64,000 bases of DNA, taken from positions 62,001 to 126,000 of the IMG/VR virus record IMGVR_UViG_3300049793_000366. One strand, 5' to 3'. A model generated the notes under the pieces. The model was not told where the DNA came from and did no database searches. It was given only the letters and a program-made list of their open reading frames with translations. The position numbers and the translations under genes were made by a program. Below are positions 11,270 to 51,378 of the stretch, one piece after another; position 1 is the stretch's first letter, and each line of letters opens with the position of its first letter.

Positions 11270-12256
11270 ATGAAAGAATTTATTGAGAAAATAAATGAGC
11301 AAATTGTAGAAGCAGTTGATATTGCGAATACTTCTAATTTTAAGAAATATTCAAAGATATCAGAGGTTTTGATTTGTGGTGTGGGTGGCTCTGGTATCTC
11401 AGGTACTATCGTAGCAAATATATTCAAAGACGAATGTAAAGTTCCTATATTCGTGAATAAGTCGTATAATATACCAAAATGGGTCAATAAGAACACGTTG
11501 ACAATTATATCATCATATTCAGGTACAACAGAAGAAACGGTTTCTTGTCTTAACCAAGCACTAAAAGCTAATACACAGATATTGTGCATAGCTACTGGTG
11601 GAACTGTTATAGAAGAAGCTAAGGATAAGAACCTCGACTATATTATTATACCATCTGGTTATCAACCAAGAGCGGCTTTAATTTATTCACTGATTCAAAT
11701 AATTAACGTATTGAGTAGTCAGGGATTTATTTCTGATAAAACAAACGAAATTAAAAACGCATCTGAGATACTTAAGTCAGAATCATGTGATGCTGTTGAA
11801 TACGCCAGACATATCGCTAAATTTATGGTGGGTTCAATTCCTATTATATACTCCGATGATATCTACGAAGGTATTGCAATAAGATTCAGGCAACAGTTGA
11901 ATGAGAATGCTAAGATGATTGCTTTCTCTTCAACATTACCAGAAATGAACCATAACGAATTAGTGGCTTTATTTGGACAATCATCCAATAGTAAAAACTA
12001 TCGTTGTATCTTCATAAATACTGGTCACGACCATGTAGAAATGCGTAAGAGATACGACTTCTTAAAGATAACTCTTGATAAGAGAGGTATACAGTGGTTG
12101 GATATCATCACACAAGGAAATACACCTCTCGAAAAAGCTTTATATACAATCCATTTAGCTGATTGGATATCTTATTACCTTTCTATTGAGAACGATGTAG
12201 ATCCGTTTGATGTTGGTATCATTGGTGCCTTAAAAGACTTCATTAAGCGCGATTAA
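11270..12256 (+). CDS. Bifunctional phosphoglucose/phosphomannose isomerase (double SIS domain)
   Basis: ICGVGGSGISG, SYSGTTEET, GYQPRAA, RFRQQLNENAK and LPEMNHNE motifs of the PGI/PMI family. Confidence 0.88.
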   Translation: MKEFIEKINEQIVEAVDIANTSNFKKYSKISEVLICGVGGSGISGTIVANIFKDECKVPIFVNKSYNIPKWVNKNTLTIISSYSGTTEETVSCLNQALKANTQILCIATGGTVIEEAKDKNLDYIIIPSGYQPRAALIYSLIQIINVLSSQGFISDKTNEIKNASEILKSESCDAVEYARHIAKFMVGSIPIIYSDDIYEGIAIRFRQQLNENAKMIAFSSTLPEMNHNELVALFGQSSNSKNYRCIFINTGHDHVEMRKRYDFLKITLDKRGIQWLDIITQGNTPLEKALYTIHLADWISYYLSIENDVDPFDVGIIGALKDFIKRD

Positions 12257-14424
12257 AGTCTCTTTCCAAAAATATCGATATTATTACCTCTCTGTTGATT
12301 CTTATATTGGTTCATAAACTTTCTGTTTCTATTAACAGATAACATAGCACCATAATCAGTTCCTTCGCTATAATCAACATTCTTTAATTTCTCATTGATG
12401 AATGTTGCTAATTCTTTTGGTATACCTCTGGTAACCATCTGTTCACATAAATCTTTGAAGAATATTTTCTTGAATACTGTCGCGGCACTAACTAATGTCA
12501 TAACAGTATCATCATTACCAGTATCAGCTTGATATCTAACGTTACCAGCAGTTGTTATAGTCTTAATAAAGGTCGTAATCTCATGTATATTCTCAGCATT
12601 ATTAACCTGTATATCACCTCTTTGCATAGCATCTTGGTAATCTTTAATTAATAGATTTTTATTATCATTGATTTTAAGACCTATCTTCTCTTCAGTAGCA
12701 TCCGCGCGATGTTTATATCTAACGAATACACCAGAGCCATAATCATTATTACCATCAAATACCTGTGGCATATGTGCTAATAATTCAGAGCCATATGTAT
12801 TTAATTCTAATACAATCTTAACCTTGTCACCATTGAAATATTCAAAGGCAATTAAATAAAGTAACTCAGCTAATTGCTTAACTGATACAATATTGGATCT
12901 AAATAATCCAATTTGAGTCAATGTAAAGAAATCAGCAGTATTATTATACGTGTGATGTTGTAACTCTATTTTCTCCTTAGACTTAGGCATGAGTCGGAAT
13001 ATATTTAAAATAGAGTAATCCTGACCCAATCCCTCTGCTATATCTACCGATATAACAACATCATATGTTTTCCTTGCAATTGGCGCGAATAGATTAGGGT
13101 CGTCAATCCATTTCAAGTTTTGATATGACCATCTTAATTTTCTATCAAACTCATGTATTTGTTCAAATACATACTCTTTTTTACTCTTAAGTAACTCATC
13201 TATTATTTTCTCATCAAATAATGATTTAGATGCGTTTACGAAACGTAAGTCGTACTCTTGATTGAAAGCCTCTTCACCACCAATATCTTTGATGGCTTCT
13301 TCTTTCCATGATGTAACCTCACATAATTCAACGATAGGTACTTCGAGACCTAATCTATTAATAAACGTAATAGCTCTAACATCATCAGTAGAACATCTAT
13401 CACTGTTTTGTATGTGTATAACATCTTTATTTGTATTGTAGTCAAACTGTTCTGTTATTTGGTCAATTGCTAAACCACCCCAATCAAAGGTGTCTCGTAA
13501 TCTTGCTACGATATCATCCTTAGATATACCGTGTTCGTGTAATAGACCTTCATCAATACGTAGATATGTAACGAATCGATTTGGTACTTGCCACCAATAC
13601 ACACGCATGGCTTTATAGTTATTCTTAAGCTTATCACCTTCTGGTCTCTCAGCAGCTGCTAATAGCTTATAGAACATATTCATACCGTTAGGTGTTGATG
13701 TAATAATAATCTTAGAGTTACTAATCGCAGAAACCGTTGGGAATGCGGCAGTATAGTATGGTTCAATAATATTAGATGGAATGTGAGCAAACTCATCCAT
13801 GTATAAGAAGTCAATAGTAAAACCGATTGCTGGTGTCTTAGAACGAGCAGATGTTTTGATACGACATCCATTTTCGAAAATAAGTGACTTTTGATTCCAG
13901 TTCTTAACACCCTTTTGTAAAAAGAATGGCATCAATCTATAAATTGATTTAATCTTATCAACAATCTCTACTGCTGTATCACCTTTATTGGCGATAATCA
14001 TCACGTTTTTATCATTATTGAATAGTACGAAGTGTAGAATAGCAATCGCGGCTGATACAGTCTTACCAACCTGACGAGATGCCATTAAGATACTGAATCT
14101 ATTTTTTGTATATAAATCTAATATATCTTTTTGGTAATCACGTAGCTTCATTTGACCTACGGTACCATCCTCTCGTTTAATCTTACAGTATTTCTCAGAG
14201 AAGTAATGAATATCAAGTTTGCATTTAATGTATTCTTGGATTTCATCCTCTGTCATTGAATATACGCAACCCGCTCGTCTAACACCTATCTCACCACTGA
14301 ACCATGGGTTCATGAATCTCTTTATAGCATAACCGTCATTAATCTTGGCTGTTACGTCTACTACATTCTCGGCATTAAATATAAATTGTTTATCTGGGGT
14401 TGGCTTTTTTGTTTTAGTAGCCAT
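12253..14424 (-). CDS. gp17: Terminase large subunit
   Basis: LRDYQ, ASRQVGKT Walker A, LYMDEFAH Walker B, IITSTPNG, FNQEY, nuclease motifs SVDIAEG and NDDTVM. Confidence 0.95.
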   Translation of the reverse strand: MATKTKKPTPDKQFIFNAENVVDVTAKINDGYAIKRFMNPWFSGEIGVRRAGCVYSMTEDEIQEYIKCKLDIHYFSEKYCKIKREDGTVGQMKLRDYQKDILDLYTKNRFSILMASRQVGKTVSAAIAILHFVLFNNDKNVMIIANKGDTAVEIVDKIKSIYRLMPFFLQKGVKNWNQKSLIFENGCRIKTSARSKTPAIGFTIDFLYMDEFAHIPSNIIEPYYTAAFPTVSAISNSKIIITSTPNGMNMFYKLLAAAERPEGDKLKNNYKAMRVYWWQVPNRFVTYLRIDEGLLHEHGISKDDIVARLRDTFDWGGLAIDQITEQFDYNTNKDVIHIQNSDRCSTDDVRAITFINRLGLEVPIVELCEVTSWKEEAIKDIGGEEAFNQEYDLRFVNASKSLFDEKIIDELLKSKKEYVFEQIHEFDRKLRWSYQNLKWIDDPNLFAPIARKTYDVVISVDIAEGLGQDYSILNIFRLMPKSKEKIELQHHTYNNTADFFTLTQIGLFRSNIVSVKQLAELLYLIAFEYFNGDKVKIVLELNTYGSELLAHMPQVFDGNNDYGSGVFVRYKHRADATEEKIGLKINDNKNLLIKDYQDAMQRGDIQVNNAENIHEITTFIKTITTAGNVRYQADTGNDDTVMTLVSAATVFKKIFFKDLCEQMVTRGIPKELATFINEKLKNVDYSEGTDYGAMLSVNRNRKFMNQYKNQQRGNNIDIFGKRL

Positions 14425-18784: not shown

Positions 18785-20935
18785 ATGAAGTACGTAATTA
18801 ATCGCGAAGAATTTGTTAAAAAAATGAACGAAAGTGTTGATAAGACACAGTTTATCAACGAAGTTATGTCAAATGACATAGGCTGGGGTGATTCATTAGT
18901 AGGTAGAATGTTTGCTTCTATATTTAGAGTAGCTAAAATGGGAGTTGATAATAAGCGAGTAGACTTCGCTTTGGGTAGATTAAAGTCATTAGCTGAGAGT
19001 ACTATTGTTTTATCAGTAGAAGAAGCTAAGAAAGAGATAGAGACTCTTAAACAAGAGGCTGAAACAGTTGCTAAAAAAGAAGCATTTGTTGATGCTATTA
19101 AGAATAATCAAGTAGACACTGCGGTTAAAGCATTAGGTCAAGCAAAAGTTATAGAAGTTATCGCTGAATTACCAGAAGAAATACAACCAGTATTCCTTGC
19201 TATTATATCAAATAGTACAGCATTAGCTACATCAAACACATCTGCTACTGCTTCTGGTGGTACAAATAGCATTGCTTCTTCTACGGATAAACCAGAAGGT
19301 GCTGGTGTTTCAGATAAACCAGAGGTTGTTGGACAAGCGGCATCAGGTGATGAAGGAAAATTACAGAAGATTCAAAATACAATTAATTCTTTAAAGAAGA
19401 TTATTGAAGATAAGAAAGCAAAAGGAGAAGATACTGCTCAGGATGAAAATCAATTAGCAGTAGCCGAAAGAACTCATAAAGTTATATCAGAAAAATTAGC
19501 TAAGGCTAAAGCTGAGGCTGAAAAACAACCAGTAGCTTCGGCTGAACAGGGTGTTCCTGATTCTATACAAGAAGCTATTGCTATCTTAGAACATATTGTT
19601 GAGTCTTTATGTACATCTTTAAACTATCAACCAATTAATGAAGAGTTAACTGGTGGTATCAAAACTAACAGCATATTGGATGCCTTTAGAAAGCAGACCA
19701 ATAAAGAGGTTAAAGAGATGAGTAAAGAAGATGCTGAGAAAGAATTACCAAACGCTATTAAAGAGCTTGAGAAGTCAGCACAAGAAGATGTTAAGAAGAT
19801 TGCACAAGAAGCTAATGAAACTGGTAAGAAATACGAAACAGTTATTAAGTCGAATAAAAAAGTATTAACGGATCCAATTGAAGTATTGAGAATATTTAAT
19901 GACGTTAATAGAATTATGATTAAAGGTAATATACCATCTGTAAGAACTGGTGGTAAAGTTAGTGTATCAAGAGCTAATAACTGGGAGAAGTTAGATGGTA
20001 GTTCTGTTAACCCTACATCACCAGGTGGTGGTCCTTTTAGAAATATTAAATTATTCAGCAAGTGGAATGATGGTGTGTTAGCATTGATGAAAGATAAAGC
20101 ATTAGAATCATTTTTTAACAGTAAATGGATTCTTGTTGATGGTGAAGAGAAACAAGTTTCTTATACAATAACATCTTTCATTACTGATATGTTAAATGAC
20201 CAACAGGCATTTGGAAAACCAGGATATCAAAAAACATACTTAGAAAAACACTTTGGTGTTAAAGGTGTTAGTCTTGGTAATGACGCTAAGAAAACTACTG
20301 CTTCTGCTGATGCTACTGAAGAAGAAAAAGCAGAACAACAAGATGTTAAAGAATGGTCATTTGTTGAATATAATGAAAATTTAAACATATCTAATTTTGC
20401 TGATAAGAAAAGCTTTAGAGTTAAGTGTACTTATAAGATGGATGGTAAGGAAAAAGAAGGTTATGTTTACTTTGTAGGATATAACAATACACTTGAGAAC
20501 AATGAATTAATCAATAAAGATATATTCAAAGGTTCTAAATTATTCCAAGTATCACTTGATAATGATTATTATATTAGTCAGTATAAGGGTTCTTCTTATA
20601 AACCAAAAAGTAGCGTTGATGTAAATAAACAAGTTTACTCAGTTATTGTAAATGATAAGGACTTTAAGAAAGAAGGTTCATTTAATTTATATGCATTACC
20701 AGCTATGAAGAGAGACCAATTAGCTGGTGCTGATCCTTCTGCGTTAGATATAAAGAAAATAACTGCGATTGATGTTCTTTCAAAAGAAGGTAAGCCAGTT
20801 GTTATGAACGTTGGTGTTACTGATAAAGATAATCAATTAAAGAAGTCTGAAAAATGGTTCCCATATACTCAAAAGGAAACAGTACAAATAATGTACGATA
20901 AGTTTTCTAAAATGAAAGGGTTCAGAGCGGCTTAA
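18785..20935 (+). CDS. Large putative internal head protein
   Basis: Leader MKYVINREEFVKKMNES, further FINE and PINE sites, Ala/Glu/Lys-rich linkers; AATATATA at 18753-18760. Confidence 0.6.
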   Translation: MKYVINREEFVKKMNESVDKTQFINEVMSNDIGWGDSLVGRMFASIFRVAKMGVDNKRVDFALGRLKSLAESTIVLSVEEAKKEIETLKQEAETVAKKEAFVDAIKNNQVDTAVKALGQAKVIEVIAELPEEIQPVFLAIISNSTALATSNTSATASGGTNSIASSTDKPEGAGVSDKPEVVGQAASGDEGKLQKIQNTINSLKKIIEDKKAKGEDTAQDENQLAVAERTHKVISEKLAKAKAEAEKQPVASAEQGVPDSIQEAIAILEHIVESLCTSLNYQPINEELTGGIKTNSILDAFRKQTNKEVKEMSKEDAEKELPNAIKELEKSAQEDVKKIAQEANETGKKYETVIKSNKKVLTDPIEVLRIFNDVNRIMIKGNIPSVRTGGKVSVSRANNWEKLDGSSVNPTSPGGGPFRNIKLFSKWNDGVLALMKDKALESFFNSKWILVDGEEKQVSYTITSFITDMLNDQQAFGKPGYQKTYLEKHFGVKGVSLGNDAKKTTASADATEEEKAEQQDVKEWSFVEYNENLNISNFADKKSFRVKCTYKMDGKEKEGYVYFVGYNNTLENNELINKDIFKGSKLFQVSLDNDYYISQYKGSSYKPKSSVDVNKQVYSVIVNDKDFKKEGSFNLYALPAMKRDQLAGADPSALDIKKITAIDVLSKEGKPVVMNVGVTDKDNQLKKSEKWFPYTQKETVQIMYDKFSKMKGFRAA

Positions 20936-21288
20936 TTTGAGCCTGTTCCGTAGGTAAAATCAAGATAGAATAATTGACCGCTTGGTCCCTCTGATGGAAT
21001 GTAGTCAGGGTGATCCGTTATAGTTTTTTCGACATATGCCTTATCTTCTATAAGAGATTCGATTTTATTTTCTCTATTTTCTTCCTTAATTTCTCGTCTA
21101 ATGCGGTTTAATTCCTCACCATTATTACCACCACCCATTGGTTGGACTGGTACTATATTAGTGGCAATTGTTTGAGCGAATACTCTTTTTATTGTAGGAA
21201 AAACAACTGAGTTAAATGAATCAGTCGTTGATTGGGTCGCATTAAGCGAACCATCATAATCCCAGTGGTCTATTAATCTGTGTCCCAT
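20932..21288 (-). CDS. Mini-protein homologous to the N-terminal (Gol-region) segment of the major capsid protein
   Basis: VFPTIKRVFAQTIATNIVPVQPM...GPSGQLFYLDFTY aligns by eye with LLPVAMKIAAQTIGLDLVAVKPTPGPKIDLLYVDFAY in the capsid protein at 33750. Confidence 0.7.
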   Translation of the reverse strand: MGHRLIDHWDYDGSLNATQSTTDSFNSVVFPTIKRVFAQTIATNIVPVQPMGGGNNGEELNRIRREIKEENRENKIESLIEDKAYVEKTITDHPDYIPSEGPSGQLFYLDFTYGTGSN

Positions 21289-21292
21289 AAAA

Positions 21293-21320
21293 ATTATATA
21301 CGGGCTATTAATGAAAGTTT
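21293..21320 (-). promoter_or_regulatory. Candidate middle (ECF-sigma) promoter
   Basis: Minus strand AAACTT-N16-TATAAT, 5 nt before the ATG at 21288. Confidence 0.65.
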
Positions 21321-22293
21321 ATTTAATCTTGATATTGAAGTAAATCCAATAATTATGTGGTTTAACTGATACTAATATCTTTTCAGACCAATTGTATTTG
21401 GTTAACCAAGTTTTGAAGTTTTGCTTGATGTTTTCGTATTCACCTTGGTCGAGATTCATACCATCCCATTTACCAACACCATATAAACCAAATGACATAA
21501 CACCATTTGTAATTTGAATAGGGCTTCTTTCTTGATAGTTAGATGGTTTGTATTCAAGTAATTCACGCTTAACTATCATGAATAATTTTATAATTCTTAT
21601 TGTAGTATCTTTCAACTCTTTTCTAAAGCTATTTAAAGACTTGTTTGGCTTGTTTAAAATAGAAATCAATACAGAGTCAGTCATTTTAAATTGACCCATT
21701 AAAATGCGCTCTCCGTCTACTAATACACCATAATCTAAATATACTGTGTTGTTGTTAAATGAAACACCGTAAAACAAACCAGATGTCTTCTTAGCTTGTT
21801 GTATATGTTGTGCGCCTATTTGTAATGAGCGATATCTTGATAGTAAATCTGATATATCCATCTTATCACCATCACAAGACCAATAAGCATAATAATCTCT
21901 TGGACAATCTTTCCAATTAGGCTCTAATTTTGATTGTAAAGCTGTTAGAACGTAAAGAAAGCAATTAAATGTGTATTTGCCTGATATTGCTACTTTTTCT
22001 ATCTCATCCATTGTTGCTGTGTTTTCATTCACAACATCAGTAGTCGCAATAACTTCTGTGTGGTCTTGATGTCCAGATATAGTATCTTCAATTTCTTTAA
22101 TGAGTACCTTTTGGTCATAATCGCTTAATAAATTAACAGCATTTGATACTGAAATATCAGGGCTAATATTGTTTATATACTTATTTACAATCTTAACTAA
22201 ATCTTTATTACCTTCTAATTGCTTCTCAACCCACTGTCCTGTTGTGGACTCGGTTGACTCTGTAATAAAATCGCTATATTTCTTAATTCTCAT
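21319..22293 (-). CDS. Hypothetical protein with capsid-targeting-like leader
   Basis: MRIKKYSDFITES. Confidence 0.6.
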   Translation of the reverse strand: MRIKKYSDFITESTESTTGQWVEKQLEGNKDLVKIVNKYINNISPDISVSNAVNLLSDYDQKVLIKEIEDTISGHQDHTEVIATTDVVNENTATMDEIEKVAISGKYTFNCFLYVLTALQSKLEPNWKDCPRDYYAYWSCDGDKMDISDLLSRYRSLQIGAQHIQQAKKTSGLFYGVSFNNNTVYLDYGVLVDGERILMGQFKMTDSVLISILNKPNKSLNSFRKELKDTTIRIIKLFMIVKRELLEYKPSNYQERSPIQITNGVMSFGLYGVGKWDGMNLDQGEYENIKQNFKTWLTKYNWSEKILVSVKPHNYWIYFNIKIK

Positions 22294-23101
22294 TTTCAAC
22301 ATTGTTATTTAATTCACCATCATTTATCGGTGTGAATTCAGAAAACTTCTGAACTGTTGGTTGTATATTCGTTACTTCTTCTGCGCCTAATGCGCTTTCT
22401 ATATCAGTAACTTGTGCATCTTTCAAATTAAACCTTTCTTTCATCTTAGATATTAAATCTACGATATAGTTATTTGTAATTAGTGTAGTTAATCCAGACC
22501 CAGCACCAATGAGCATACCTGGTAATACTTCCATATCAATCTTATACTTATCTATTAAATTTGATAGTATTTGTATGATTGGTGTTAACAAAGTCATATA
22601 ATTAAACAAGTCCAAGAACTGATAAACTAATTTACCGATATGTTTAGAGATGATGTTAAATATAGAGCGAATAGAATTAATACATCTAACGGCTTTCTTA
22701 ACAATACCATATATCCCCTGCATTCTAAATTCTTCCAATTCTAATTGGATATCTCTAACTATTAATTCTTTTTCCTTAATTGGTATATCTGCTCTTTTGT
22801 CTTCAACGTGCGTTATTGCTACCGCGCATATCGTCATATTAACAACCATATCTGGTGTTATTGTAACAGTTGACTTCTCGTTTTTAACTAAACTATTTAT
22901 AAAGTCATATAGCGGTAGAATATCGATTGACCTAATAAAGTCGAAACTATGCTTTAAATCATTAAATGCTTTGTTGTGTAGTTCATCCCATGTTGTGGAA
23001 GAAGATTCGTGTAAATTATCAGATAATAGACCCTTTAGGAAATCTTGACAAAAGACTTCCATGTATGACTGTGAATACTCTTCGAATTTTTGAACCTTCA
23101 T
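22283..23101 (-). CDS. Hypothetical protein with capsid-targeting-like leader
   Basis: MKVQKFEEY; AATATATA at 23107-23114 on the minus strand. Confidence 0.6.
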   Translation of the reverse strand: MKVQKFEEYSQSYMEVFCQDFLKGLLSDNLHESSSTTWDELHNKAFNDLKHSFDFIRSIDILPLYDFINSLVKNEKSTVTITPDMVVNMTICAVAITHVEDKRADIPIKEKELIVRDIQLELEEFRMQGIYGIVKKAVRCINSIRSIFNIISKHIGKLVYQFLDLFNYMTLLTPIIQILSNLIDKYKIDMEVLPGMLIGAGSGLTTLITNNYIVDLISKMKERFNLKDAQVTDIESALGAEEVTNIQPTVQKFSEFTPINDGELNNNVENEN

Positions 23102-23129
23102 GTTCCTATATATTAAATGTCAAAATTAA

Positions 23130-23507
23130 TTAGCCGAAATAAGAATAGACTTCATAATCTTTTATCTTGAAGTCAATAAACATCATATCTTGATATCTTT
23201 CCGGATCTGCGACAAATCTAACATCTAATACATAGTTGATTCCTGCAATTTCTGTGATGTAGCTTTCTATCTGACTTATTATTTCAGATTTTATAAAGTC
23301 AGATGAAACTCTTGTTTCGTGTAAATATTTATATAAATCGGCACCAAACTCTGGATCCCCAAGTAATTCGCCTTTTGAAGTGAATAATATCATTTCATAT
23401 TTTTGAATAATTACTTCTATGACTTCATCTTCGATGATTTCATTTGGGTTATACCTATGATGACCTTCGTATAGAATATAGAAGTCTGTGAAATTGAAAT
23501 TAGCCAT
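23130..23507 (-). CDS. gp25: Baseplate wedge protein, gp25/GPW-like
   Basis: ILFTSKGELLGDPEFGADLYKYLHE pattern. Confidence 0.8.
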   Translation of the reverse strand: MANFNFTDFYILYEGHHRYNPNEIIEDEVIEVIIQKYEMILFTSKGELLGDPEFGADLYKYLHETRVSSDFIKSEIISQIESYITEIAGINYVLDVRFVADPERYQDMMFIDFKIKDYEVYSYFG

Positions 23508-23537
23508 AGATTATATATAAAAAAAGAATTATTACCA

Positions 23538-23792
23538 ATGTGGTTTGTTTACTTAGTTGAATGTTCGGATGGTACGTTGTATTGTGGTATATCAAATGAT
23601 GTTGATAAGCGCATAGATAAGCATAATACCAAAAAGGGTGCTAAATACACATCAACGAGAACACCTGTAAGACTTGTATATAAAGAAAAAGCAGATGATA
23701 GGTCATCTGCTTCAAAAAGGGAATATGTTATAAAGAAATTAAGTAGAGATAAAAAACTATTATTGATTAAGAGCTTTAACCTCGCCGAATAA
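23538..23792 (+). CDS. Small GIY-YIG nuclease (YhbQ-like)
   Basis: FVYLVECSDGTLYCGISNDVDKRIDKHN...GAKYT...REYVIK. Confidence 0.9.
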   Translation: MWFVYLVECSDGTLYCGISNDVDKRIDKHNTKKGAKYTSTRTPVRLVYKEKADDRSSASKREYVIKKLSRDKKLLLIKSFNLAE

Positions 23793-24704
23793 TGATAATC
23801 CTACGATTATTGGATCTGTGCCTGAGTTTTCTAAAAATGTTGTATGCTCAGTTACTAACCTCGATACTTTGAATATCTTATCTACGAAAGGTTTCTTGTT
23901 TTCAAAAATCCACTGTATGAATGGCTTACCCATTAATCTAATCATTTCGTCTATCTTATCTGCTCCGAAATTTGTCATCAAGAAGTGATAAACTTGTTCA
24001 GGTGTATCATTTGAGAAAACCATATCATATAACTGCATTCTTAACTTTAAGTCTATGTTAGAACCAGTTGATGATAACTCACCAGTTTCTTTAAAGTTTT
24101 GTAACTGAACAAGTATAGCGCGAAAATCAGGAAAGTATTTGTTTATCAGTTTAACTAAGTCATCCTTACTTATTGTTATATCTTCCGCTGGACAAATTAC
24201 TTCCATGATGCGTTTATACATCTGTGTTTTAAGAAACTTCTCTTCTTCAAGACTTTGTGCATTGAAATCAATGATTAGAAATCGAGAATGTAGTGGGTCT
24301 ATTATCTTACTCAGATTATTAGTGGTAGCAATGAACCTAACTGTTGTGTGCTTTTCGATGAAGCCCTTGAAAGCTTCTTGAAATTGCCGAGATGCACCCT
24401 CAAACTCGTCTAAAAATACAACCTTTGTATCATCAGCGGAATCAAACATTGACATAGTAGAACAGAATTCTTCTATCTTTGAACGTAACGTATCAATAGA
24501 TGTCTCCATCGATGTATTGATTGATAGACAAGGCTTACCGTTTGATAATATCTTAGATAATGTTGTTTTACCAATACCAGAAGTTCCGTATAGTATAATG
24601 TTTTTACTTAGTCCATTTTCGATAGACTTTCGTATTCTTGGTAGAAGGATTATATCGTCCAATGTAGACGGACGCCATTTTTCCCAAAATAGTTTATTTT
24701 TCAT
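23760..24704 (-). CDS. gp44: Sliding-clamp loader AAA+ subunit (gp44/RFC-small-like)
   Basis: WEKWRP, GTSGIGKTT, VVFLDEFE, FIATTN, LHSRF, FPDFR motifs. Confidence 0.9.
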   Translation of the reverse strand: MKNKLFWEKWRPSTLDDIILLPRIRKSIENGLSKNIILYGTSGIGKTTLSKILSNGKPCLSINTSMETSIDTLRSKIEEFCSTMSMFDSADDTKVVFLDEFEGASRQFQEAFKGFIEKHTTVRFIATTNNLSKIIDPLHSRFLIIDFNAQSLEEEKFLKTQMYKRIMEVICPAEDITISKDDLVKLINKYFPDFRAILVQLQNFKETGELSSTGSNIDLKLRMQLYDMVFSNDTPEQVYHFLMTNFGADKIDEMIRLMGKPFIQWIFENKKPFVDKIFKVSRLVTEHTTFLENSGTDPIIVGLSLFGEVKALNQ

Positions 24705-27528: not shown

Positions 27529-27556
27529 AAACTTATCATGATGAGTATTGTATAAT
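27529..27556 (+). promoter_or_regulatory. Candidate middle (ECF-sigma) promoter of the late sigma gene
   Basis: AAACTT-N16-TATAAT. Confidence 0.65.
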
Positions 27557-27596: not shown

Positions 27597-27962
27597 ATGT
27601 ATTTAAATAATCGAGATTTATTTGTTGAAATCGTTGTGTCTAAAGCACAGGGCAAATTAACACCAAAGGCAAAAGTAATGCTTGAACTTCTTGCAAAGAA
27701 GACTATTAAAAAAATGCGTTACTATAACAACGACGATAGAATGGATTGTTATCAATCAGGTCTTCTTGATATGTTTTCAAACTGGCATAACTTCAATGAA
27801 GAGAAATCAACAAATGCTTTCGCTTATTATACAGAAATCTTCAAAAGAGGATTAGCAAAGGGATATAATGAATTGTATAAGAAAAAAGGCGATGCCGAAC
27901 ATTTAATTAAACTAGTATCATTGGATAGCTCTAATGATGGACAAGGATTACACTCAATATAA
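27597..27962 (+). CDS. gp55: Late-transcription sigma factor, gp55-like
   Basis: YLNNRDL start, DRMDCYQSG, KSTNAFAYYTEIFKR (equivalent to the NPFAYFTQ motif of gp55-like proteins). Confidence 0.8.
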   Translation: MYLNNRDLFVEIVVSKAQGKLTPKAKVMLELLAKKTIKKMRYYNNDDRMDCYQSGLLDMFSNWHNFNEEKSTNAFAYYTEIFKRGLAKGYNELYKKKGDAEHLIKLVSLDSSNDGQGLHSI

Positions 27963-29591: not shown

Positions 29592-31331
29592 ATGGCCAGT
29601 TATAACCCACAGAACAATCCGCAAAATCAAGTTGTGACAGGGGGTGCCGCACAGAATCGCGGTGTTTTCAGTAGAATACTAAGAGATTTATCGTCGTGGG
29701 GAATGAATTATGATGACATGATTATCAAAAATTCATATGCTATTTCCATTAATGAAGATCCATATTCTCAAAAGGGATTTGGTATGTACGATTTCTTTTC
29801 ACAAAAGGCTATTGCCTCTATTATGGCTAAGAAGTCTATTCCTTATTTAGATAGAGCTTACCCAGATAAAAGAAGAATATTAAGAGAATATTCAATCAAA
29901 GATGAAGTACGAGATTTTGTTACTACAATAGCTGATGAGGTTATTATTTATGGTGATGATGGTCAGAAGTTTTGTAAGCCGAGGTCATTACCAGATGAAT
30001 ACTCTCAAGAAATTAAGAATAAATATCAAGAAGTATTTGAGAAGATATATTCTAAATATGGATTTAATGATGGTATATCTGCTTGGTACTATATAAAGGG
30101 ATTTCTTATTGATGGTTACTTAGCATTCGAAATCGTTTATGATGATAAATTCAAGAATATCATTCACTTTAACCAATTAGACCCAGCTACTCTAGTTCCG
30201 GGTTATGAACCAGCAACGGGTAAACATATTTGGATTCAATATCCAGAAGACCCACAGCTTAGAAAGATTCTATTAGACTCACAAGTTGTTTTCATATCAT
30301 ATTCAACACAAAAAGAATATTCTGAGACATCTTATGTTGAGGGATTAATTAGACCATATAATCAATTAAAAATCATAGAGCAAACAAGAATTATGTTCAA
30401 TATGTTGAACGCTATGATTTATCAGAAGTTTACAATTCCAATTACAGGTTTATCGCGTCAACGTGCAGAAGAGCAAATATCACAATTGATATCCGATTAT
30501 TCAGAAGAGGTTGAATGGGATGACTCATTAGGAACTGTTATGATTAATGGTTCGAAGCATTTACCATATAACAAACAATTGTGGTTCCCTGAGGGTGAAG
30601 GTGGGTCTCCTGCTTTTGAATTAGTATCACCAGAAGGACACAATCTAAATGAGTCTGATATGCTTACTTGGTTTTTTAATGCACTTAAGAGAGCAAGTAG
30701 AATTCCATTCTCACGATTTGATAAGGATAATGGTGGTGGTAATATATTCTCTGATGCATCTGAGATGACAAGAGATGAGGTGAAATTTTCAAACTTCATT
30801 AATAGATTAAGAACCGCTTATAGAGAGATACTTGTTAAGCCAATGAAACTTCAAATGATTATTGAATTTCCTGAGCTTATAAAGGATGAAATATTTCAAA
30901 ATGCTGTTGGTATCGAATTCAATTCAAATGATTTATTTGAAGAATGGAAGAAACTAAATAACCTACAGAAGAGAGCAGAGATTGTATCAAGTATGTTAGG
31001 TTCAATTCAAACAGCAGATGGTCAACCATATTTTCATGTTGACTATTTAGTAGATACAGTTTTAAAGTTGACTGAGGATGAAAAACAAGCTAACGCACGT
31101 TACAAACTTAAAGGTGGAGCAAATGCTACCGCTGGAGAAGGTGGCGCACCAGGCGGTGTAGGCGGAGCTGAACCAGGTGGACCTGATTTAGGTGGTGGTG
31201 GTGGAGCTGAACCAGGTGGTGACATCGGTGGCGCACCAGAAGAAGGTGGTGATGTAGGTGGTCCTGAACCGGGTGGTCCTGAACCAGGAGGTGATACAGA
31301 AGGTGCTGGTGGTGACGAATTTGAATTCTAA
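29592..31331 (+). CDS. gp20: Portal protein with Gly/Pro/Glu-rich C-terminal tail
   Basis: FLIDGYLAFE, LDPATL, SYVEGLIRPYNQLKIIE, WFP..EG, LKRASRIPFSRF, ITRDE-like MTRDEVKF; AATATATA at 29562-29569. Confidence 0.93.
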   Translation: MASYNPQNNPQNQVVTGGAAQNRGVFSRILRDLSSWGMNYDDMIIKNSYAISINEDPYSQKGFGMYDFFSQKAIASIMAKKSIPYLDRAYPDKRRILREYSIKDEVRDFVTTIADEVIIYGDDGQKFCKPRSLPDEYSQEIKNKYQEVFEKIYSKYGFNDGISAWYYIKGFLIDGYLAFEIVYDDKFKNIIHFNQLDPATLVPGYEPATGKHIWIQYPEDPQLRKILLDSQVVFISYSTQKEYSETSYVEGLIRPYNQLKIIEQTRIMFNMLNAMIYQKFTIPITGLSRQRAEEQISQLISDYSEEVEWDDSLGTVMINGSKHLPYNKQLWFPEGEGGSPAFELVSPEGHNLNESDMLTWFFNALKRASRIPFSRFDKDNGGGNIFSDASEMTRDEVKFSNFINRLRTAYREILVKPMKLQMIIEFPELIKDEIFQNAVGIEFNSNDLFEEWKKLNNLQKRAEIVSSMLGSIQTADGQPYFHVDYLVDTVLKLTEDEKQANARYKLKGGANATAGEGGAPGGVGGAEPGGPDLGGGGGAEPGGDIGGAPEEGGDVGGPEPGGPEPGGDTEGAGGDEFEF

Positions 31332-31392: not shown

Positions 31393-33666
31393 ATGAAACC
31401 AGTATTAATTGTAGAACACAACACTAGTTCACTTCGTCCTCTAAATGAGAACGCGACTGGGGAAAAAGATTGGATCTTAAGCGGAACGTTTACTGAATTC
31501 GGTGTAAAAAACCGTAATGAGCGTATCTATACTGCTGAAAAATTTCTTCCTTGTCTTAACGAATTGAACGAGCGTATTACTACTATGGGTGTAGTTTACG
31601 GTGAGTTCGACCATCCAGATGTATTTGATACATCTCTATCTAGAGCGTCACACCTTATCAAGTCTACACGCTATGTAAACGAGTCTAACAAAGTAGAAGG
31701 TGAAATTAAATTACTTAACACTTATTGGGGTAAAGAAGCTAAAGCATTAGTTCAAGACGGATGCCCAATCTTTGTTTCTTCAAGAGCTGCTGGTATCACT
31801 GAATCTGACGGAACTGTAACACTTAAAAAGTTATTTACTTATGACATTGTTGCTGATCCTGGTTTTGCTTCTGCTAAGATGGAAGTAAGATCCTTAAATG
31901 AATCTTTTGGATTTAATTCTAACGCAAACTTCAGAATATATGAAATGTCTAACGACTCAAAAATTAATGATTTATTCAATATGAACAAGAATGAATTTGT
32001 AACAAAGCAACAATTGACTGATTACTCTAAGTATTTAGTTAAGGAACTTGCTTCGACTAAAGAACAAGTTACCAAAGCTATTAAGACTGGAAACGTTGAG
32101 CCAAAGAAATTGGATCAAATGATGGAGTATTATGAGAACTTAAATACTACAAGTACACAAATTGTTAAATACTTAGATTATTTATCAGAAAAAGTACAAA
32201 TCGTAGTTAACGAAAACAATTCTTTAAAAGAAACTGCTTCTAAGCTTATGAAGCATAATGATTATTTAGCTGAGAACTTAGAAAAAGCAATTGGTTATAC
32301 TGAATACTTAGCTGAGAACTTAGATAAGAACATTGAATACTCTGAATATTTAGCGGAAAATTTAGATAAGAATATTTCTTATGCTGAATACCTTGCTGAG
32401 AATGTTGACAAAAACATTTCTTACTCAGAATATATTGCTGAGAACTTAGATAAAAACATTGCATACTCTGAATATTTAGCAGAAAACTTAGATAAGAATA
32501 TTGCTTACTCTGAGTATATCGCTGAAAATTTATCAAAAAACATTGACTATTCTGAATATTTAGCAGAACACGTTGATAATACAATTGCGTATTCTGAATA
32601 TTTAGCAGAACACGTTGAAGGAAACATCAAATACTCTGAATATTTAGCAGAGAATTTAGATGATACTATTGCATACTCGGATTATATCGCTGAGTCTTTA
32701 GATAAAACTATTACTTATGCTGGTATGATTACTGAAAAATTAAATGGTTCAAAATTAAATGAATCAATTGAAGGTGGTAAAATTTTAACACTTGAAGATT
32801 ATGGATTTGAAGCAGAAGAAGAAGTTCTTCCAATCGAAAACGGTCAAGAAGAAGGTGCTGAAGAAGAATTACTTCCACTTGAAGACGGAGAAGAGAATAT
32901 CGATGACGTTGATGGTGAAGAACAACCACAAGAAGGTGATGAATCAATCATCGCTAAATTACAAGACTTAAACGCAGAAGAAGGTGACTTATTAAACGCA
33001 TTAGCAGGTGAAGAATCTGTTGAAGGTGAAGAGTCTGCTGAAAATCTTCCATTGGAAGGTGAAGAAGCTCCTGCTGAGGGTGGTCAAGAAGAAGGTGCTG
33101 AAGGAGAAGAAGACTTCGACGGTGGTGCTGATGAAGACGAAACTCAATTTGAGTCCAACACGGATCTATCAAAACAAATAGATACTCTAATCGCAGAAGC
33201 TAAGAAACGTAAAGCTTCAGAAACAAGCGATTTACATTTCTTGAAATTTTTAAACAAGAGTCAAGCTGACAGTTTCAACAGCTTAACAAATGAAGAACGC
33301 GAACTTGTTACTGTGTACCTAAACGAAAACACGTATTTCTCAAGCGCAGATGTTCTACGTTTAATGAATGAAGCTCTATCGACTAAAAATGAGTCAATGG
33401 AAGAAAAGCTAATCAGATTGATGCCAGAAAACATTAAGCCAATTTGGGAGCAAATGAATGAATCTTCAAAGAAGAGCATTTTATCACAAGCAAGATTATA
33501 TCCTGACTTGAACAGTGAGCAAAAAGTAGAACACTTTTGGTTAACGAGAAACCTTAAAAAGAACGAGTCAACTAAGAAATTAGTATCTCACGAGGCTATC
33601 ATTCAAGAAGATAAATTATCTGACAATGAGATGAATTCTATCTTAGAAAGATTTAAAAATCTATAA
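31393..33666 (+). CDS. gp21: Prohead protease (gp21-like) fused to a scaffold/core domain
   Basis: NRNERIY, GEFDHP, VSSRAAG and YDIVADPG protease motifs; followed by a coiled coil, tandem 14-aa repeats and an acidic region. Confidence 0.9.
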   Translation: MKPVLIVEHNTSSLRPLNENATGEKDWILSGTFTEFGVKNRNERIYTAEKFLPCLNELNERITTMGVVYGEFDHPDVFDTSLSRASHLIKSTRYVNESNKVEGEIKLLNTYWGKEAKALVQDGCPIFVSSRAAGITESDGTVTLKKLFTYDIVADPGFASAKMEVRSLNESFGFNSNANFRIYEMSNDSKINDLFNMNKNEFVTKQQLTDYSKYLVKELASTKEQVTKAIKTGNVEPKKLDQMMEYYENLNTTSTQIVKYLDYLSEKVQIVVNENNSLKETASKLMKHNDYLAENLEKAIGYTEYLAENLDKNIEYSEYLAENLDKNISYAEYLAENVDKNISYSEYIAENLDKNIAYSEYLAENLDKNIAYSEYIAENLSKNIDYSEYLAEHVDNTIAYSEYLAEHVEGNIKYSEYLAENLDDTIAYSDYIAESLDKTITYAGMITEKLNGSKLNESIEGGKILTLEDYGFEAEEEVLPIENGQEEGAEEELLPLEDGEENIDDVDGEEQPQEGDESIIAKLQDLNAEEGDLLNALAGEESVEGEESAENLPLEGEEAPAEGGQEEGAEGEEDFDGGADEDETQFESNTDLSKQIDTLIAEAKKRKASETSDLHFLKFLNKSQADSFNSLTNEERELVTVYLNENTYFSSADVLRLMNEALSTKNESMEEKLIRLMPENIKPIWEQMNESSKKSILSQARLYPDLNSEQKVEHFWLTRNLKKNESTKKLVSHEAIIQEDKLSDNEMNSILERFKNL
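32254..32757 (+). repeat. Twelve tandem 42-nt (14-aa) coding repeats in the scaffold
   Basis: Consensus YSEYLAENLDKNIx from HNDYLAENLEKAIG to YAGMITEKLNGSKL; synonymous variation between copies. Confidence 0.9.
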
Positions 33667-33749: not shown

Positions 33750-35426
33750 ATGTCACACATTAGAATAGACAAACAAAAAGCAATTAAGAAGTGGACACCT
33801 GTTCTTGAGAACATGGGAGTTAAAGATTCTGAAAGAATCGACTGGATGGCGGAATACGCTGAGTTCCACTCAATTAATGAAAATGCTTACGTTAATCAGC
33901 ATAACTTAGCTGGTTTAGGTAACGCTCTTTCTCCTCAACCTTCAAGCATCCCAGGTCAAACTATCGGTGCTTACACAACTAACGGTGGTGTAGTTGGTTC
34001 AGGTGATATCGGACAACAACTTTTACCAGTAGCGATGAAGATTGCTGCTCAAACTATCGGTCTTGACTTGGTAGCGGTAAAGCCAACTCCGGGTCCAAAA
34101 ATCGATTTATTATATGTAGATTTCGCATATGATGACACTCCAATGGGTGAAGGTCGTCCTCAAGTTTTCAAAGTAAACAACGCTTCTGCGGCTGCTATTG
34201 CTAACTTAAGAACCCTTATCACAATCGCTGGTGCGCGTGAAGTGCAAGGTGGATTAACTGGTGCTAAAATTTGGGTTTCTATCAACGCAACTGCGTCTGG
34301 TACTTTCTCTTACGGTGCAACAGAAAACTCTGCTCCTGCGAACAAAAAAGGATGGGTTGAATTCTTAGGTTTCTCTCGTATCGATGGTTATCCAATGTTA
34401 CGTGCTTACCGTCAGAACAACTACACAGGACAAAACAATTGGGCATATGACCAAACAGTAAATACATTCACTTCAACAGGTGATATCGCATCTCAAATCA
34501 CTATGATTTCTGGTGTAGCATTCTCTTCTGCTGCTGTAGAATTAATTTCTGCTCTTGAAGACCATATCCCAGGTTTCGTATCTAACTGGGCTGATAATAA
34601 CTTATCTCCAATGAACCGTAATGCTGATGAGAACTCTTATCCTGGTATTATTGCTCCAAGAGTATCAAGTAAATCAGTACAAGTTGGTACTATCGAAATT
34701 TCTTCTGCTTTAAAGCGTACAGAAATTGAAGATATCAAAGCTAACACAGGTATGGATATCGTTCAAAAGATGGAATCTATCCTTGTTAACGAATTATCTC
34801 AAACAATCTCTAAACAAATTGTTGCGAAGATTTTCGAAATGGGTGATTTAAACAGAGCTTCTGCTCCAACTTTAACTGCTACGGCTGGTATCGCGGACAG
34901 AACTATCTTCGACTTTGACGTTACAAGTTATTTAGCTACTAACGCACCAGGTGGAGAAACATCTCACGCAGTTCAACGTAAGTTAATCTCTAAGATTTTC
35001 AACGCAAGTAACTACTTAGCAACAGAAGGACGTATCGGGCCTGCACAGTTCGCTGTGACAAACGGTAACTTAGCTTCTGTATTAATGGATATCTCTGGAT
35101 ATACTATTAACCCAGCTAAGTCTAAGTTAAATACTGCTGGACAATTATACCCAGTTGGAACAATCGGTGATATCACTATCTACGTTGATCCATACATGAA
35201 GTATAACGACAACCGTATCGTTTTAGGACGTAAGAACAACCCTGACCAACCAGGTATCATCTTCGTTCCTTACTTGATGGCACAATCAATCAGCATCATC
35301 TCTGAAGCGACTTTCGCTCCAAGAATGTTACTAAGAAGCCGTTACGCGGTGACTGAAGTAGGTTGGTTCCCTCAAAAACAATATATGACACTTAAGGTGT
35401 ACGATGCAAATCAGAACCTTATCTAA
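33750..35426 (+). CDS. gp23: Major capsid protein
   Basis: W.PVLE start, AQTIGLDLVAVKP, ELSQTISKQI, GTIGDITIYVDPY, FVPY, TFAP...SRYAV; putative maturation site SINE/N. Confidence 0.93.
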   Translation: MSHIRIDKQKAIKKWTPVLENMGVKDSERIDWMAEYAEFHSINENAYVNQHNLAGLGNALSPQPSSIPGQTIGAYTTNGGVVGSGDIGQQLLPVAMKIAAQTIGLDLVAVKPTPGPKIDLLYVDFAYDDTPMGEGRPQVFKVNNASAAAIANLRTLITIAGAREVQGGLTGAKIWVSINATASGTFSYGATENSAPANKKGWVEFLGFSRIDGYPMLRAYRQNNYTGQNNWAYDQTVNTFTSTGDIASQITMISGVAFSSAAVELISALEDHIPGFVSNWADNNLSPMNRNADENSYPGIIAPRVSSKSVQVGTIEISSALKRTEIEDIKANTGMDIVQKMESILVNELSQTISKQIVAKIFEMGDLNRASAPTLTATAGIADRTIFDFDVTSYLATNAPGGETSHAVQRKLISKIFNASNYLATEGRIGPAQFAVTNGNLASVLMDISGYTINPAKSKLNTAGQLYPVGTIGDITIYVDPYMKYNDNRIVLGRKNNPDQPGIIFVPYLMAQSISIISEATFAPRMLLRSRYAVTEVGWFPQKQYMTLKVYDANQNLI

Positions 35427-40133: not shown

Positions 40134-40161
40134 AAACTTTCTCACAAACAATTTGTATAAT
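40134..40161 (+). promoter_or_regulatory. Candidate middle (ECF-sigma) promoter of polB
   Basis: AAACTT-N16-TATAAT. Confidence 0.65.
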
Positions 40162-50197: not shown

Positions 50198-50198
50198 A

Positions 50199-50757: not shown

Positions 50758-51378
50758 ATGAATTTAGACGGCAATCTAGTTGAATTTTCTGAACAAGAAA
50801 CTCTTTTCAGAGAGCGAACAGGGAACGATTTCGCATTCTTTTACAAGAAATATTACCCAAAACTTATTTACTACACATCCAAAATGTGTAATGATCCTCA
50901 AGAAGCAGAGGATGTATCTACCGAATCTTTTATGGTAGCTCTTCAAAAAATCGACAAGTACGAGAAAGACAAAGCACAATTTTCCACTTGGTTATTTACG
51001 ATAGCTCGAAACCTTATGTTACAAAATTTAAAAAGCAAGAAAAAGTTTGTATCAATGGATTACGAGATTGATGAAGAGGGAACAACAATGAAAGACTTTA
51101 TCCAAGAACCACATCAAGAGGGTTCTCATTCAGATGAACAGTTCTATGAGCTTTTTGATAAAAAGGCTGAGATTCTGAAAAAACACATCGATAAGCTTGA
51201 ACCAATTTACCGTACGGTTATTGAAATGAGAGAGCTTAAAAAAATGCCCTACAAGGACATCGCGGTTATACTTAATCTGAATGAAAATACAGTTAAGTCG
51301 CAGATACGCAATGGGCGAATAAAACTACAGAAAATGGTCAAGAAAGAATTTGATGTTCTTGACGAAATGTTCACGTAG
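50758..51378 (+). CDS. ECF-type (RpoE-like) sigma-70 factor
   Basis: Region 2 EAEDVSTESF...FSTWLFTIARN; region 4 PYKDIAVILNLNENTVKSQIRNGRIKL. Confidence 0.9.
   Translation: MNLDGNLVEFSEQETLFRERTGNDFAFFYKKYYPKLIYYTSKMCNDPQEAEDVSTESFMVALQKIDKYEKDKAQFSTWLFTIARNLMLQNLKSKKKFVSMDYEIDEEGTTMKDFIQEPHQEGSHSDEQFYELFDKKAEILKKHIDKLEPIYRTVIEMRELKKMPYKDIAVILNLNENTVKSQIRNGRIKLQKMVKKEFDVLDEMFT

What the first reader, a model, noticed from the sequence alone, without database searches (positions are those of the whole stretch)
20932..21288. Stand-alone mini-paralog of the capsid protein's Gol region, expressed from a middle promoter
Seen: the 118-aa ORF contains VFPTIKRVFAQTIATNIVPVQPM-(about 45-aa charged insert)-GPSGQLFYLDFTY. 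This parallels LLPVAMKIAAQTIGLDLVAVKPTPGPKIDLLYVDFAY of the real capsid protein, and nothing else of the capsid fold is present. It has an AAACTT-N16-TATAAT promoter rather than the late motif. Known: the matching stretch of T4 gp23 is the Gol peptide (AVMGMVRRAIPNLIAFDICGVQPMNSPTG), which binds EF-Tu and triggers the Lit protease; other defences also sense capsid proteins. Inference: a decoy made before the capsid protein to titrate a capsid-sensing defence, an EF-Tu modulator, or an assembly regulator.
Basis: partly seen in the sequence, partly recalled or inferred. Interest (0 to 1): 0.75.

Follow-up and report, generated by a model that had tools for sequence, protein, structure and literature searches.

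The report
Stand-alone mimic of capsid N-terminus
A giant soil phage encodes a small, conserved protein that copies only the N-terminal arm of its own capsid protein (the stretch equivalent to T4's Gol peptide), appears to be switched on with replication genes rather than capsid genes, and has an untested function.

Summary
ORF 20932-21288 (minus strand, 118 aa) is a partial paralog of the window's major capsid protein (33750-35426). A profile of 15 relatives matches capsid residues 6-114 at E=1.4e-18. The window copy maps onto T4 gp23 ~90-130, which includes the Gol region.

It is not an eroding fragment. It represents 621 clusters of small proteins (60-236 aa among the best 150), with dN/dS 0.19-0.43.

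AAACT[TA]-N15-16-TATAAT occurs 13 times in the genome (3.6 expected), 10 of them 4-40 nt before a called gene. Those genes include DNA polymerase and the gp55-like late sigma. The element is conserved before five of six orthologs. It is distinct from the late-type TAATATATA motif that precedes the capsid, portal and sheath genes.

The "charged insert" is an internal copy of a motif, RDxK(I/L)xx(I/L)(I/L), that ends 78 otherwise unrelated small non-late ORFs of this genome. The motif was abundant in the stretches sampled from the two GenBank megaphages that have the mini gene and rare in those sampled from four that lack it.

Function is unproven: co-folding with the capsid protein gave no answer and no RNA data were listed. 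I favour a pre-late competitive mimic of the free capsid N-arm. Decoy versus assembly role is open.

The parts
20932..21288 (-). Mini-paralog ORF, 118 aa (short form of the family).
   Evidence: the family has 621 clusters at E<=1e-3, and the best 150 are all 60-236 aa. dN/dS is 0.19-0.43.
21136..21219 (-). aa 24-51: the segment homologous to the capsid N-arm. It corresponds to window MCP residues 86-114 and T4 gp23 ~90-117 (Gol region).
   Evidence: Pfam Gp23 profile positions 3-32; hhalign; alignment with T4 gp23.
20989..21135 (-). aa 52-100: 49-aa insert at the turn between the two capsid-like segments. It contains the only confidently predicted helix (aa 57-81).
   Evidence: AF2 model; alignment.
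21049..21075 (-). aa 72-80 (RENKIESLI): internal copy of the clade-wide RDxK(I/L)xx(I/L)(I/L) motif. N71, R72 and K75 are nearly invariant in the 120-member family alignment.
   Evidence: A tail HMM built without the mini scores 13.3 bits at aa 66-80.
20950..20988 (-). aa 101-113 (GPSGQLFYLDFTY): homologous to capsid residues 112-127 (PTPGPKIDLLYVDFAY) and T4 gp23 ~118-130.
   Evidence: In relative P0025 the corresponding C-terminal segment (aa 120-146) matches phrog_138 positions 82-107.
21293..21320 (-). Promoter-like element AAACTT-N16-TATAAT, ending 4 nt before the ATG.
   Evidence: The element occurs 13 times in the genome against 3.6 in shuffles, 10 of them 4-40 nt upstream of a called gene. 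It is conserved before orthologs.
21319..22302 (-). Conserved upstream neighbour, 327 aa, function unknown.
   Evidence: Synteny in all six loci examined. It occurs in the same two GenBank phages as the mini. AF2 pLDDT is 81, with no informative fold match.
33750..35426 (+). Major capsid protein, 558 aa. It is the parent of the mini; residues 6-127 are the duplicated part.
   Evidence: Pfam Gp23 4.6e-27.
27529..27556 (+). Second copy of the AAACTT-N16-TATAAT element, 40 nt before the gp55-like late sigma gene (27597-27962).
   Evidence: phrog_234 E=1.4e-7.
40134..40161 (+). Third copy of the element, 20 nt before the family-B DNA polymerase ORF (40182-41699).
50758..51378 (+). Phage-encoded sigma-70-family factor with regions 2 and 4. 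It is a candidate reader of the AAACTT/TATAAT class (inference).
   Evidence: PF04542 at 63.3 bits and PF04545 at 32.9 bits in one open frame.

Best explanation
Origin and anatomy. The gene arose by duplication of the 5' end of the major capsid gene. Its product keeps the capsid protein's N-arm segment and the strand that follows it, equivalent to T4 gp23 ~90-130 (Gol region included). Longer relatives also keep the propeptide start. None of the HK97 body remains, so it cannot build a shell. A helix carrying the clade's RDxK(I/L)xx(I/L)(I/L) motif is inserted at the turn between the two capsid-like segments. On its own the protein is predicted to be disordered apart from that helix.

Expression. 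It has its own AAACTT-N16-TATAAT promoter-like element. That class also precedes DNA polymerase and the late sigma gene. It is probably read by the phage's own sigma-70-family factor, so the protein would be made before the capsid protein and probably alongside it.

Mechanism (inferred). It acts as a competitive mimic. It occupies whatever binds the free N-terminal arm of unassembled capsid protein, and through the inserted motif it is tied to the partner shared by about 78 small non-late proteins. I favour a pre-assembly guard role over a role as a virion building block. That guard would either shield or titrate a host factor or sensor that sees the free N-arm, or hold that arm's binding site until assembly.

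Shown: homology, conservation, the motif, the promoter class. Inferred: timing, binding, role.
For: Homology to capsid residues 6-114 is shown at E=1.4e-18. The family profile also matches the T4 gp23 propeptide, residues 1-39, at E=3.2e-6.

The family is large and made of small proteins. It is under purifying selection. It has long and short forms, 78 and 78 of 164.

AF2 gives a mean pLDDT of 61, with only helix 57-81 confident. The ESM Atlas model of relative P0016 has pLDDT 0.40.

The promoter class is enriched and gene-proximal, and precedes DNA polymerase, the gp55-like sigma, a glycosyltransferase, a GNAT and an HNH gene. It is conserved before orthologs at varying distance from the ATG. 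A phage sigma factor with regions 2 and 4 is present.

The late-type TAATATATA motif precedes the capsid, portal, protease and sheath genes but not the mini.

The motif is shared with 78 ORFs, of which only 1 has the late-type core motif (ATATATA) upstream, against 159 of 646 genes overall. The motif and the mini co-occur in the same two GenBank megaphages.

Against: There is no binding evidence of any kind. Co-folding of the mini with the capsid protein scored 0.00, which the tool reports as 'no answer' and not as evidence.

Timing is inferred from promoter class only; no RNA run was listed.

The gene lies 30 nt after a gene run headed by a late-type motif, with no terminator-like site in 20500-23700, so it may be mainly late.

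A peptide carrying the Gol-like epitope would be expected to trigger a Lit-type sensor rather than block it. No such sensor was looked for in the host lineage.

The co-occurrence of motif and mini rests on one subclade and on 50-100 kb sampled per genome.
Confidence: 0.4

Rival explanations
1. Head-assembly component. The protein uses capsid-like propeptide and N-arm contacts to dock onto the scaffold/protease, the portal or neighbouring capsid subunits. It would act inside the prohead as a minor core, plug or size-regulating protein, possibly cleaved at its conserved (L/I)-x-E site.
For: The gene lies in the structural module, after a gp25-like baseplate gene and 12 kb from the portal-protease-capsid genes. 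Its conserved upstream neighbour carries the late-type motif 4 nt before its ATG in four relatives. Long forms keep the propeptide start, which in T4 lies in the part of gp23 thought to face the scaffold core. A conserved S-L-I-E / S-L-V-E sequence sits in the insert.
Against: Its own promoter belongs to the non-late class. Half of the family has lost the propeptide part. It shows no similarity to T4 gp67 or gp68. It is absent from four related megaphages that have the same capsid type. The putative cleavage site is missing in P0002 and P0003. Co-folding gave no answer.
Confidence: 0.3
2. It is simply one member of the RDxK(I/L)xx(I/L)(I/L)-motif set of small non-late proteins. The motif does the work, and the capsid-like flanks are an evolutionary leftover with no mimicry function.
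For: The motif is the most conserved part of the family: N71, R72 and K75 are nearly invariant. A tail HMM recognises 98 of 164 members. The gene shares the non-late character of the motif set.
Against: The capsid-like residues are also conserved across hundreds of clusters: P31, T40, Y108 and D110 are nearly invariant, within consensus blocks LLPIAxKVAAxTIG and LFYLD. Here the motif is internal, not C-terminal as in the 78 other ORFs.
Confidence: 0.15
3. It is a non-functional, decaying fragment of a capsid gene duplication.
For: The window copy is a short form lacking the propeptide part. The single-sequence similarity is weak.
Against: The family has 621 clusters, with frames intact in all members retrieved. 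dN/dS is 0.19-0.43. Synteny and promoter are conserved.
Confidence: 0.02

Closest known systems
T4 gp23 Gol region (residues ~94-122), the trigger of the Lit protease through EF-Tu
   Same: It is the homologous stretch of a Gp23-family capsid protein, down to the V-Q-P-M turn.
   Different: Here it is a separate gene rather than part of the capsid protein. It is interrupted by a 49-aa insert just after the QPM turn. The likely host is Bacteroidota, where no Lit/EF-Tu interplay is known. Binding was not tested.
Capsid-gene paralogs such as the T4 gp24 vertex protein
   Same: Both arose by duplication of the major capsid gene and retain the N-arm motif.
   Different: gp24 keeps the whole HK97 fold (Pfam Gp23 positions 2-376). 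The mini keeps only profile positions 3-32 plus one strand.
T4 alt.-1/alt.-2, annotated as an old duplication of the first part of gene alt
   Same: They are a precedent for a stand-alone duplicate of the 5' end of a head-associated gene (record annotation).
   Different: They have no known conservation as a large family, and no inserted motif.
T4 small prohead core proteins gp67 and gp68, and the internal proteins with capsid-targeting sequences
   Same: They are small proteins associated with head assembly that depend on short targeting peptides.
   Different: There is no sequence similarity (hhalign E=0.28 and 0.68). The mini's promoter class is non-late.

Membership tests
Pfam PF07068 Gp23 (major capsid protein, HK97 fold) | Score above the curated gathering cut-off. 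| tested here: not met
   19.7 bits against a cut-off of 24.4. The long relatives P0016, P0005 and P0012 give no hit at E<=0.01.
Pfam PF07068 Gp23 (major capsid protein, HK97 fold) | Presence of the HK97 body (P and A domains). | tested here: not met
   Only profile positions 3-32 of 376 are matched, and the protein has 118 aa. hhalign covers capsid residues 6-114 only.
Pfam PF07068 Gp23 (major capsid protein, HK97 fold) | Homology of the N-terminal propeptide/N-arm segment. | tested here: met
   hhalign gives probability 99.1% and E=1.4e-18 against the phage's own capsid protein, and E=3.2e-6 against T4 gp23 residues 1-39.
Gol-type trigger peptide of the Lit system | Sequence equivalent to T4 gp23 94-122. 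| tested here: met
   Mapping through the Pfam profile and an alignment with T4 gp23 taken from NC_000866. The equivalent stretch is split by the insert after QPM.
Gol-type trigger peptide of the Lit system | Binds EF-Tu and activates a Lit-like protease. | not testable with these tools
   This needs biochemistry. The host is unknown, although relatives are predicted to infect Bacteroidetes (PMC7162821).
Prohead core / internal head proteins (T4 gp67, gp68, IPs) | Sequence relationship to known core proteins. | tested here: not met
   hhalign E=0.28 (gp67) and E=0.68 (gp68).
Prohead core / internal head proteins (T4 gp67, gp68, IPs) | Late expression together with the head genes. | tested here: inconclusive
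   Its own promoter-like element is of the non-late class. Read-through from a late-type operon upstream remains possible.
Anti-defence decoy | Made before the molecule it imitates. | tested here: inconclusive
   This rests on promoter-class inference only. No RNA run was listed.
Anti-defence decoy | Binds and blocks a host sensor. | not testable with these tools
   The host and any sensor are unknown.
RDxK(I/L)xx(I/L)(I/L)-motif small proteins of this megaphage subclade (defined here) | Carries the motif. | tested here: met
   The tail HMM scores 13.3 bits at aa 66-80. It scores 98 of 164 family members at >=8 bits and none of the shuffled, MCP-family or neighbour-family controls.
RDxK(I/L)xx(I/L)(I/L)-motif small proteins of this megaphage subclade (defined here) | Motif within 12 aa of the C-terminus. 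| tested here: not met
   In the mini and five orthologs checked the motif is internal, 38-48 aa from the C-terminus.

The most novel reading that the evidence does not exclude
A megaphage subclade makes, from a middle-class promoter read by its own sigma factor, a disordered mimic of the capsid protein's free N-arm. The mimic blocks or pre-empts a host factor that senses unassembled capsid protein. It is wired through an inserted short linear motif into a network of about 80 small pre-late proteins that all dock on one common partner.
Probability: 0.2. Interest if true: 0.85.

Novelty: new variant of a known kind. Interest (0 to 1): 0.62.

Why it matters
Capsid proteins are now known to trigger several bacterial immune systems, and the T4 Gol region is the classic example. 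This is a widespread, conserved family that reproduces exactly that stretch as a separate small protein, apparently on an earlier transcription programme than the capsid gene. It is a concrete candidate either for a capsid-mimic countermeasure or for a trans-acting regulator of giant-capsid assembly. Either can be tested by pull-downs.

The side findings matter in their own right. A peptide motif ends about 12% of the genome's ORFs. The three promoter classes suggest a possible host-sigma, phage-sigma, gp55-like-sigma cascade. Both give handles on how uncultured half-megabase phages organise infection.

Tried and rejected
- Co-folding of the capsid protein with the mini, using my own alignments, gave 'no answer' (score 0.00). 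It is not used as evidence.
- Search for RNA runs: none was listed. Only one DNA run, a soil metagenome and probably the source sample, holds the region.
- Fold searches for the 327-aa neighbour in PDB and BFVD gave no informative match. Neither did the Atlas.
TATAAT alone is not enriched upstream of genes (81 genes against 67 in shuffles). A standard sigma-70 scan shows no excess (13 sites against 18.6). The box ends only 4 nt before the ATG.
- I withdrew that doubt for three reasons. The full two-part pattern is enriched and gene-proximal. It is conserved before orthologs. The late-type motif sits at the same 4-nt distance before 37 genes, so near-leaderless starts seem normal here.
- A late-motif weight matrix gives the mini's upstream region only a background score.
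- Similarity to T4 gp67 and gp68: none.
- I considered whether the mini and the 263-aa capsid-C-terminal-like ORF are two halves of one split capsid paralog. The only shared piece is the short motif (hhalign probability 27%), which many unrelated ORFs also carry. I rejected the idea as unsupported.
- A viral-contig scan for relatives of that 263-aa ORF found nothing.
- I checked whether the motif could be a clamp-binding tail. The gp55-like sigma ends differently (...LVSLDSS...), so this is not supported.
- TM-like hydrophobic stretches are not enriched among the motif ORFs (6 of 78 against 33 of 380).
Full report
**What is there.** The ORF lies at 20932..21288 on the minus strand, with an ATG start and 118 aa. 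The capsid stretch they were compared with is residues 91-127 of ORF 33750..35426. That ORF is a Gp23-family major capsid protein (Pfam E=4.6e-27).

The window belongs to a 507,910-bp virus record with 33% G+C. Its capsid protein is 65% identical to those of the 634-642-kb "uncultured phage" genomes LR745206 and LR756502. Those are Mahaphage-clade genomes predicted to replicate in Bacteroidetes (PMC7162821). The one run found to hold the region is a soil metagenome, possibly the source sample.

The surrounding genes are structural and replicative:
- tail sheath, 1205-4996
- large terminase, 12253-14424
- gp25-like baseplate protein, 23130-23507
- clamp loader, 23760-24704
- portal, 29592-31331
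- prohead protease, 31393-33666
- capsid protein, 33750-35426

**Is the similarity real?** For the single sequence it is marginal. BLASTP against the phage's own capsid protein gives two HSPs at E=0.002 each. Pfam Gp23 gives 19.7 bits, below the 24.4-bit cut-off, matching aa 24-53 to profile positions 3-32.

The family settles it. A word-indexed search found 15 small relatives of 106-153 aa (alignment A1). Their profile aligns to capsid residues 6-114 with probability 99.1% and E=1.4e-18.

Long family members also carry the capsid propeptide start (K-K-W-x-P-I-L-x-x-M-G ... W-x-S-E-Y-A-E). The profile even matches residues 1-39 of T4 gp23 (E=3.2e-6). The window copy is a short form that keeps only "LIDHW" of that part.

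The Gol mapping holds as well. The Pfam profile begins at T4 gp23 residue 88, so mini aa 24-53 correspond to gp23 ~90-119. The Gol peptide occupies 94-122 in the T4 record. The insert falls right after the Q-P-M turn. The C-terminal strand (LFYLDF) aligns with T4 "QVFALRAVY" and with the capsid "LLYVDF".

**Is it a functional gene?** Yes.
- An exhaustive profile search found 621 clusters (at 50% identity) with E<=1e-3 and 214 with E<=1e-10. All of the best 150 are 60-236 aa, so these are stand-alone proteins and not capsid fragments.
- Of 164 members collected, 78 are long forms with the propeptide-like start, 78 are short forms, and 8 are intermediate. All begin with M.
- Pairwise dN/dS among six orthologs is 0.19-0.43, with dS saturated.
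- No Pfam or PHROG family describes them.
- In GenBank phages only LR756502 and LR745206 have a stand-alone copy. In four other megaphage records (LR756500, LR756501, LR756503 and LR756504; LR756501 and LR756503 give identical hits) the query hits only the capsid gene's own 5' end.

**Structure.** AF2 with the family alignment gives a mean pLDDT of 61. Only helix 57-81, inside the insert, is confident. The ESM Atlas model of the long relative P0016 has pLDDT 0.40. The protein therefore looks disordered on its own and would fold on a partner.

[quoted passage not shown] It is thought to contact the scaffolding core, and after expansion it forms the N-arm and N-fist. Met98 contributes to the portal-whisker contact (PMC9546572).

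**The insert is a copy of a genome-wide motif.** An HMM of the insert, run against all ORFs of the genome, picked up dozens of weak hits at the extreme C-termini of small ORFs.

- The pattern R-[DEN]-x-[KQT]-[ILV]-x-x-[ILV]-[ILV] occurs 94 times in the genome's ORFs, 78 of them within 12 aa of a C-terminus. Reversed sequences give 0 C-terminal hits, and shuffles give a mean of 0.8.
- The 78 ORFs have a median length of 98 aa. Their bodies are unrelated by BLASTP (70 components among 73). Codons at the motif vary, so the constraint is on the peptide.
- Only 1 of the 78 has the late-type core motif (ATATATA) within 80 nt upstream, against 159 of 646 genes overall. They are nearly absent from the structural region.
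- A tail HMM built without the mini scores the window mini at 13.3 bits (aa 66-80). It scores 98 of 164 family members at >=8 bits. It scores none of the shuffled minis, none of 120 capsid proteins, none of 26 neighbour proteins, and 20 of 3,656 other ORFs.
- In the 120-member alignment the nearly invariant residues are P31, T40, N71, R72, K75, Y108 and D110. Both the capsid-like parts and the motif are therefore under constraint.
- The tail motif also ends small ORFs in related loci.
- It is frequent in the two GenBank megaphages that have the mini (7 and 13 per 50 kb). It is rare (0-1 per 50 kb) in LR756504, LR756501, LR756500 and Lak-C1, which lack the mini. Only 50-100 kb per genome were sampled, and this is one subclade, so the association is suggestive only.

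**Promoter.** Two motifs dominate gene starts in this genome.
- (T)AATATATA is found before 111 genes, against 12.6 in shuffles. It precedes the capsid, portal, protease and sheath genes, and often ends 4-6 nt before the ATG.
- The Bacteroidota-type TAnnTTTG is found before 55 genes, against 14.5 in shuffles.

The mini has neither.
- AAACTT-N15-17-TATAAT occurs 3 times in the window, against 0.39 expected.
- AAACT[TA]-N15-16-TATAAT occurs 13 times in the genome, against a shuffle mean of 3.6 and a maximum of 6. Ten copies lie 4-40 nt upstream of a called gene on the same strand. An eleventh lies 20 nt before the DNA polymerase ORF, which starts with TTG.
- The genes served include the gp55-like late sigma factor (27597-27962, phrog_234 E=1.4e-7) and family-B DNA polymerase (40182-41699). 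They also include a glycosyltransferase, a glutamine-synthetase-like protein, an HNH endonuclease and a GNAT acetyltransferase.
- The element is exact before the mini orthologs in L012, L004 and L013. It has one mismatch in L014 and two in L002. The rest of each spacer and the distance to the ATG (4-19 nt) differ.
- The phage encodes a sigma-70-family factor with regions 2 and 4 at 50758-51378.

From my own knowledge, an "AAC"-containing -35 element is typical of ECF-type sigma promoters. In T4, gene 55 is transcribed before late genes.

A cascade of host sigma, then phage sigma, then gp55-like sigma is therefore a reasonable inference. It would place the mini in the middle class. No RNA data could be found to test it.

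The gene also sits 30 nt downstream of the 327-aa gene, with no terminator-like site in 20500-23700. In the window the run is headed by a late-type motif before the 272-aa gene (22283-23101). In four relatives the 312-319-aa homolog of the 327-aa gene carries the late-type motif 4 nt before its ATG. Late read-through is therefore likely as well.

**Context.** In all six loci the mini follows a 312-327-aa protein, with 0-5 small ORFs between them; where compared directly the homolog is 33-36% identical to the window's. That protein occurs in the same two GenBank phages as the mini. It folds confidently (pLDDT 81) but matches nothing informative.

**Interpretation.** What is shown:
- a conserved stand-alone paralog of the capsid N-terminus
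- no capsid body
- an internal copy of a clade-specific peptide motif
- its own promoter-like element of a non-late class

What is inferred is that the protein competes for whatever binds the free N-arm of unassembled capsid protein. I give about 0.4 to a pre-assembly guard or decoy-type role. I give about 0.3 to a role inside the assembling head, 0.15 to the view that the motif alone matters, and 0.02 to a dead fragment. The single co-folding job gave no answer and is not counted either way.

Noticed in passing
Whole genome G000. In the window, for example, 50172-50657 (+) ends ...RRDAKLQQLL.: 78 small ORFs (median 98 aa, about 12% of genes) end in R-[DEN]-x-[KQT]-[ILV]-x-x-[ILV]-[ILV]. Reversed sequences give 0 and shuffles give 0.8. 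Their bodies are unrelated, codons at the motif vary, and they lack the late motif. They are densest at 425-508 kb of the genome. No Pfam or PHROG family matches them.
   Followed up: partly
Window 50758-51378 (+), 27597-27962 (+), and motif sites 21293-21320 (-), 27529-27556 (+), 40134-40161 (+).: There are three promoter-like classes: TAnnTTTG (host type), AAACT[TA]-N15-16-TATAAT, and TAATATATA. The phage also encodes a sigma factor with regions 2 and 4 and a gp55-like sigma. The gp55-like gene sits behind the second class, which suggests a sigma cascade.
   Followed up: partly
G000 278551-278748 (-) = L010 1321..2079, and G000 199835-200623 (+) = L011 1150..1941.: Two further partial capsid paralogs of 252 and 263 aa resemble only the C-terminal part of the capsid protein (hhalign E=6.8e-8 and 2.8e-6). 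The 263-aa ORF and its convergent 189-aa neighbour each carry a sequence resembling the RDxKI motif near the N-terminus.
   Followed up: partly
Genome-wide, for example window 5061-5570 (-), 22283-23101 (-), 37876-39426 (-).: The late-type motif AATATATA ends exactly 4 nt before the ATG of 37 genes, and 5-6 nt before 20 more. This implies leaderless or near-leaderless late mRNAs.
   Followed up: no
Window 20932-20935.: The mini and the convergent 716-aa ORF (18785-20935) overlap by 4 nt at their stop codons (TTAA). There is no intergenic space and no terminator-like hairpin.
   Followed up: no
Window 21319-22302 (-).: The 327-aa neighbour is confidently folded. It has an N-terminal helical part, a disordered linker at 78-105, and an alpha/beta C-terminal domain. 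It has no informative structural match and co-occurs with the mini in the same genomes.
   Followed up: partly
Window 40182-41699 (+).: The family-B DNA polymerase ORF covers the exonuclease domain and only positions 21-155 of 453 of the polymerase domain, then stops. The gene seems to be split or interrupted.
   Followed up: no
Window 23538-23792 (+).: An 84-aa ORF is wedged between the gp25-like gene and the clamp-loader gene. Its counterpart in relative L012 carries a GIY-YIG Pfam hit, and the arrangement is conserved there. It looks like a homing-endonuclease-type insertion.
   Followed up: no
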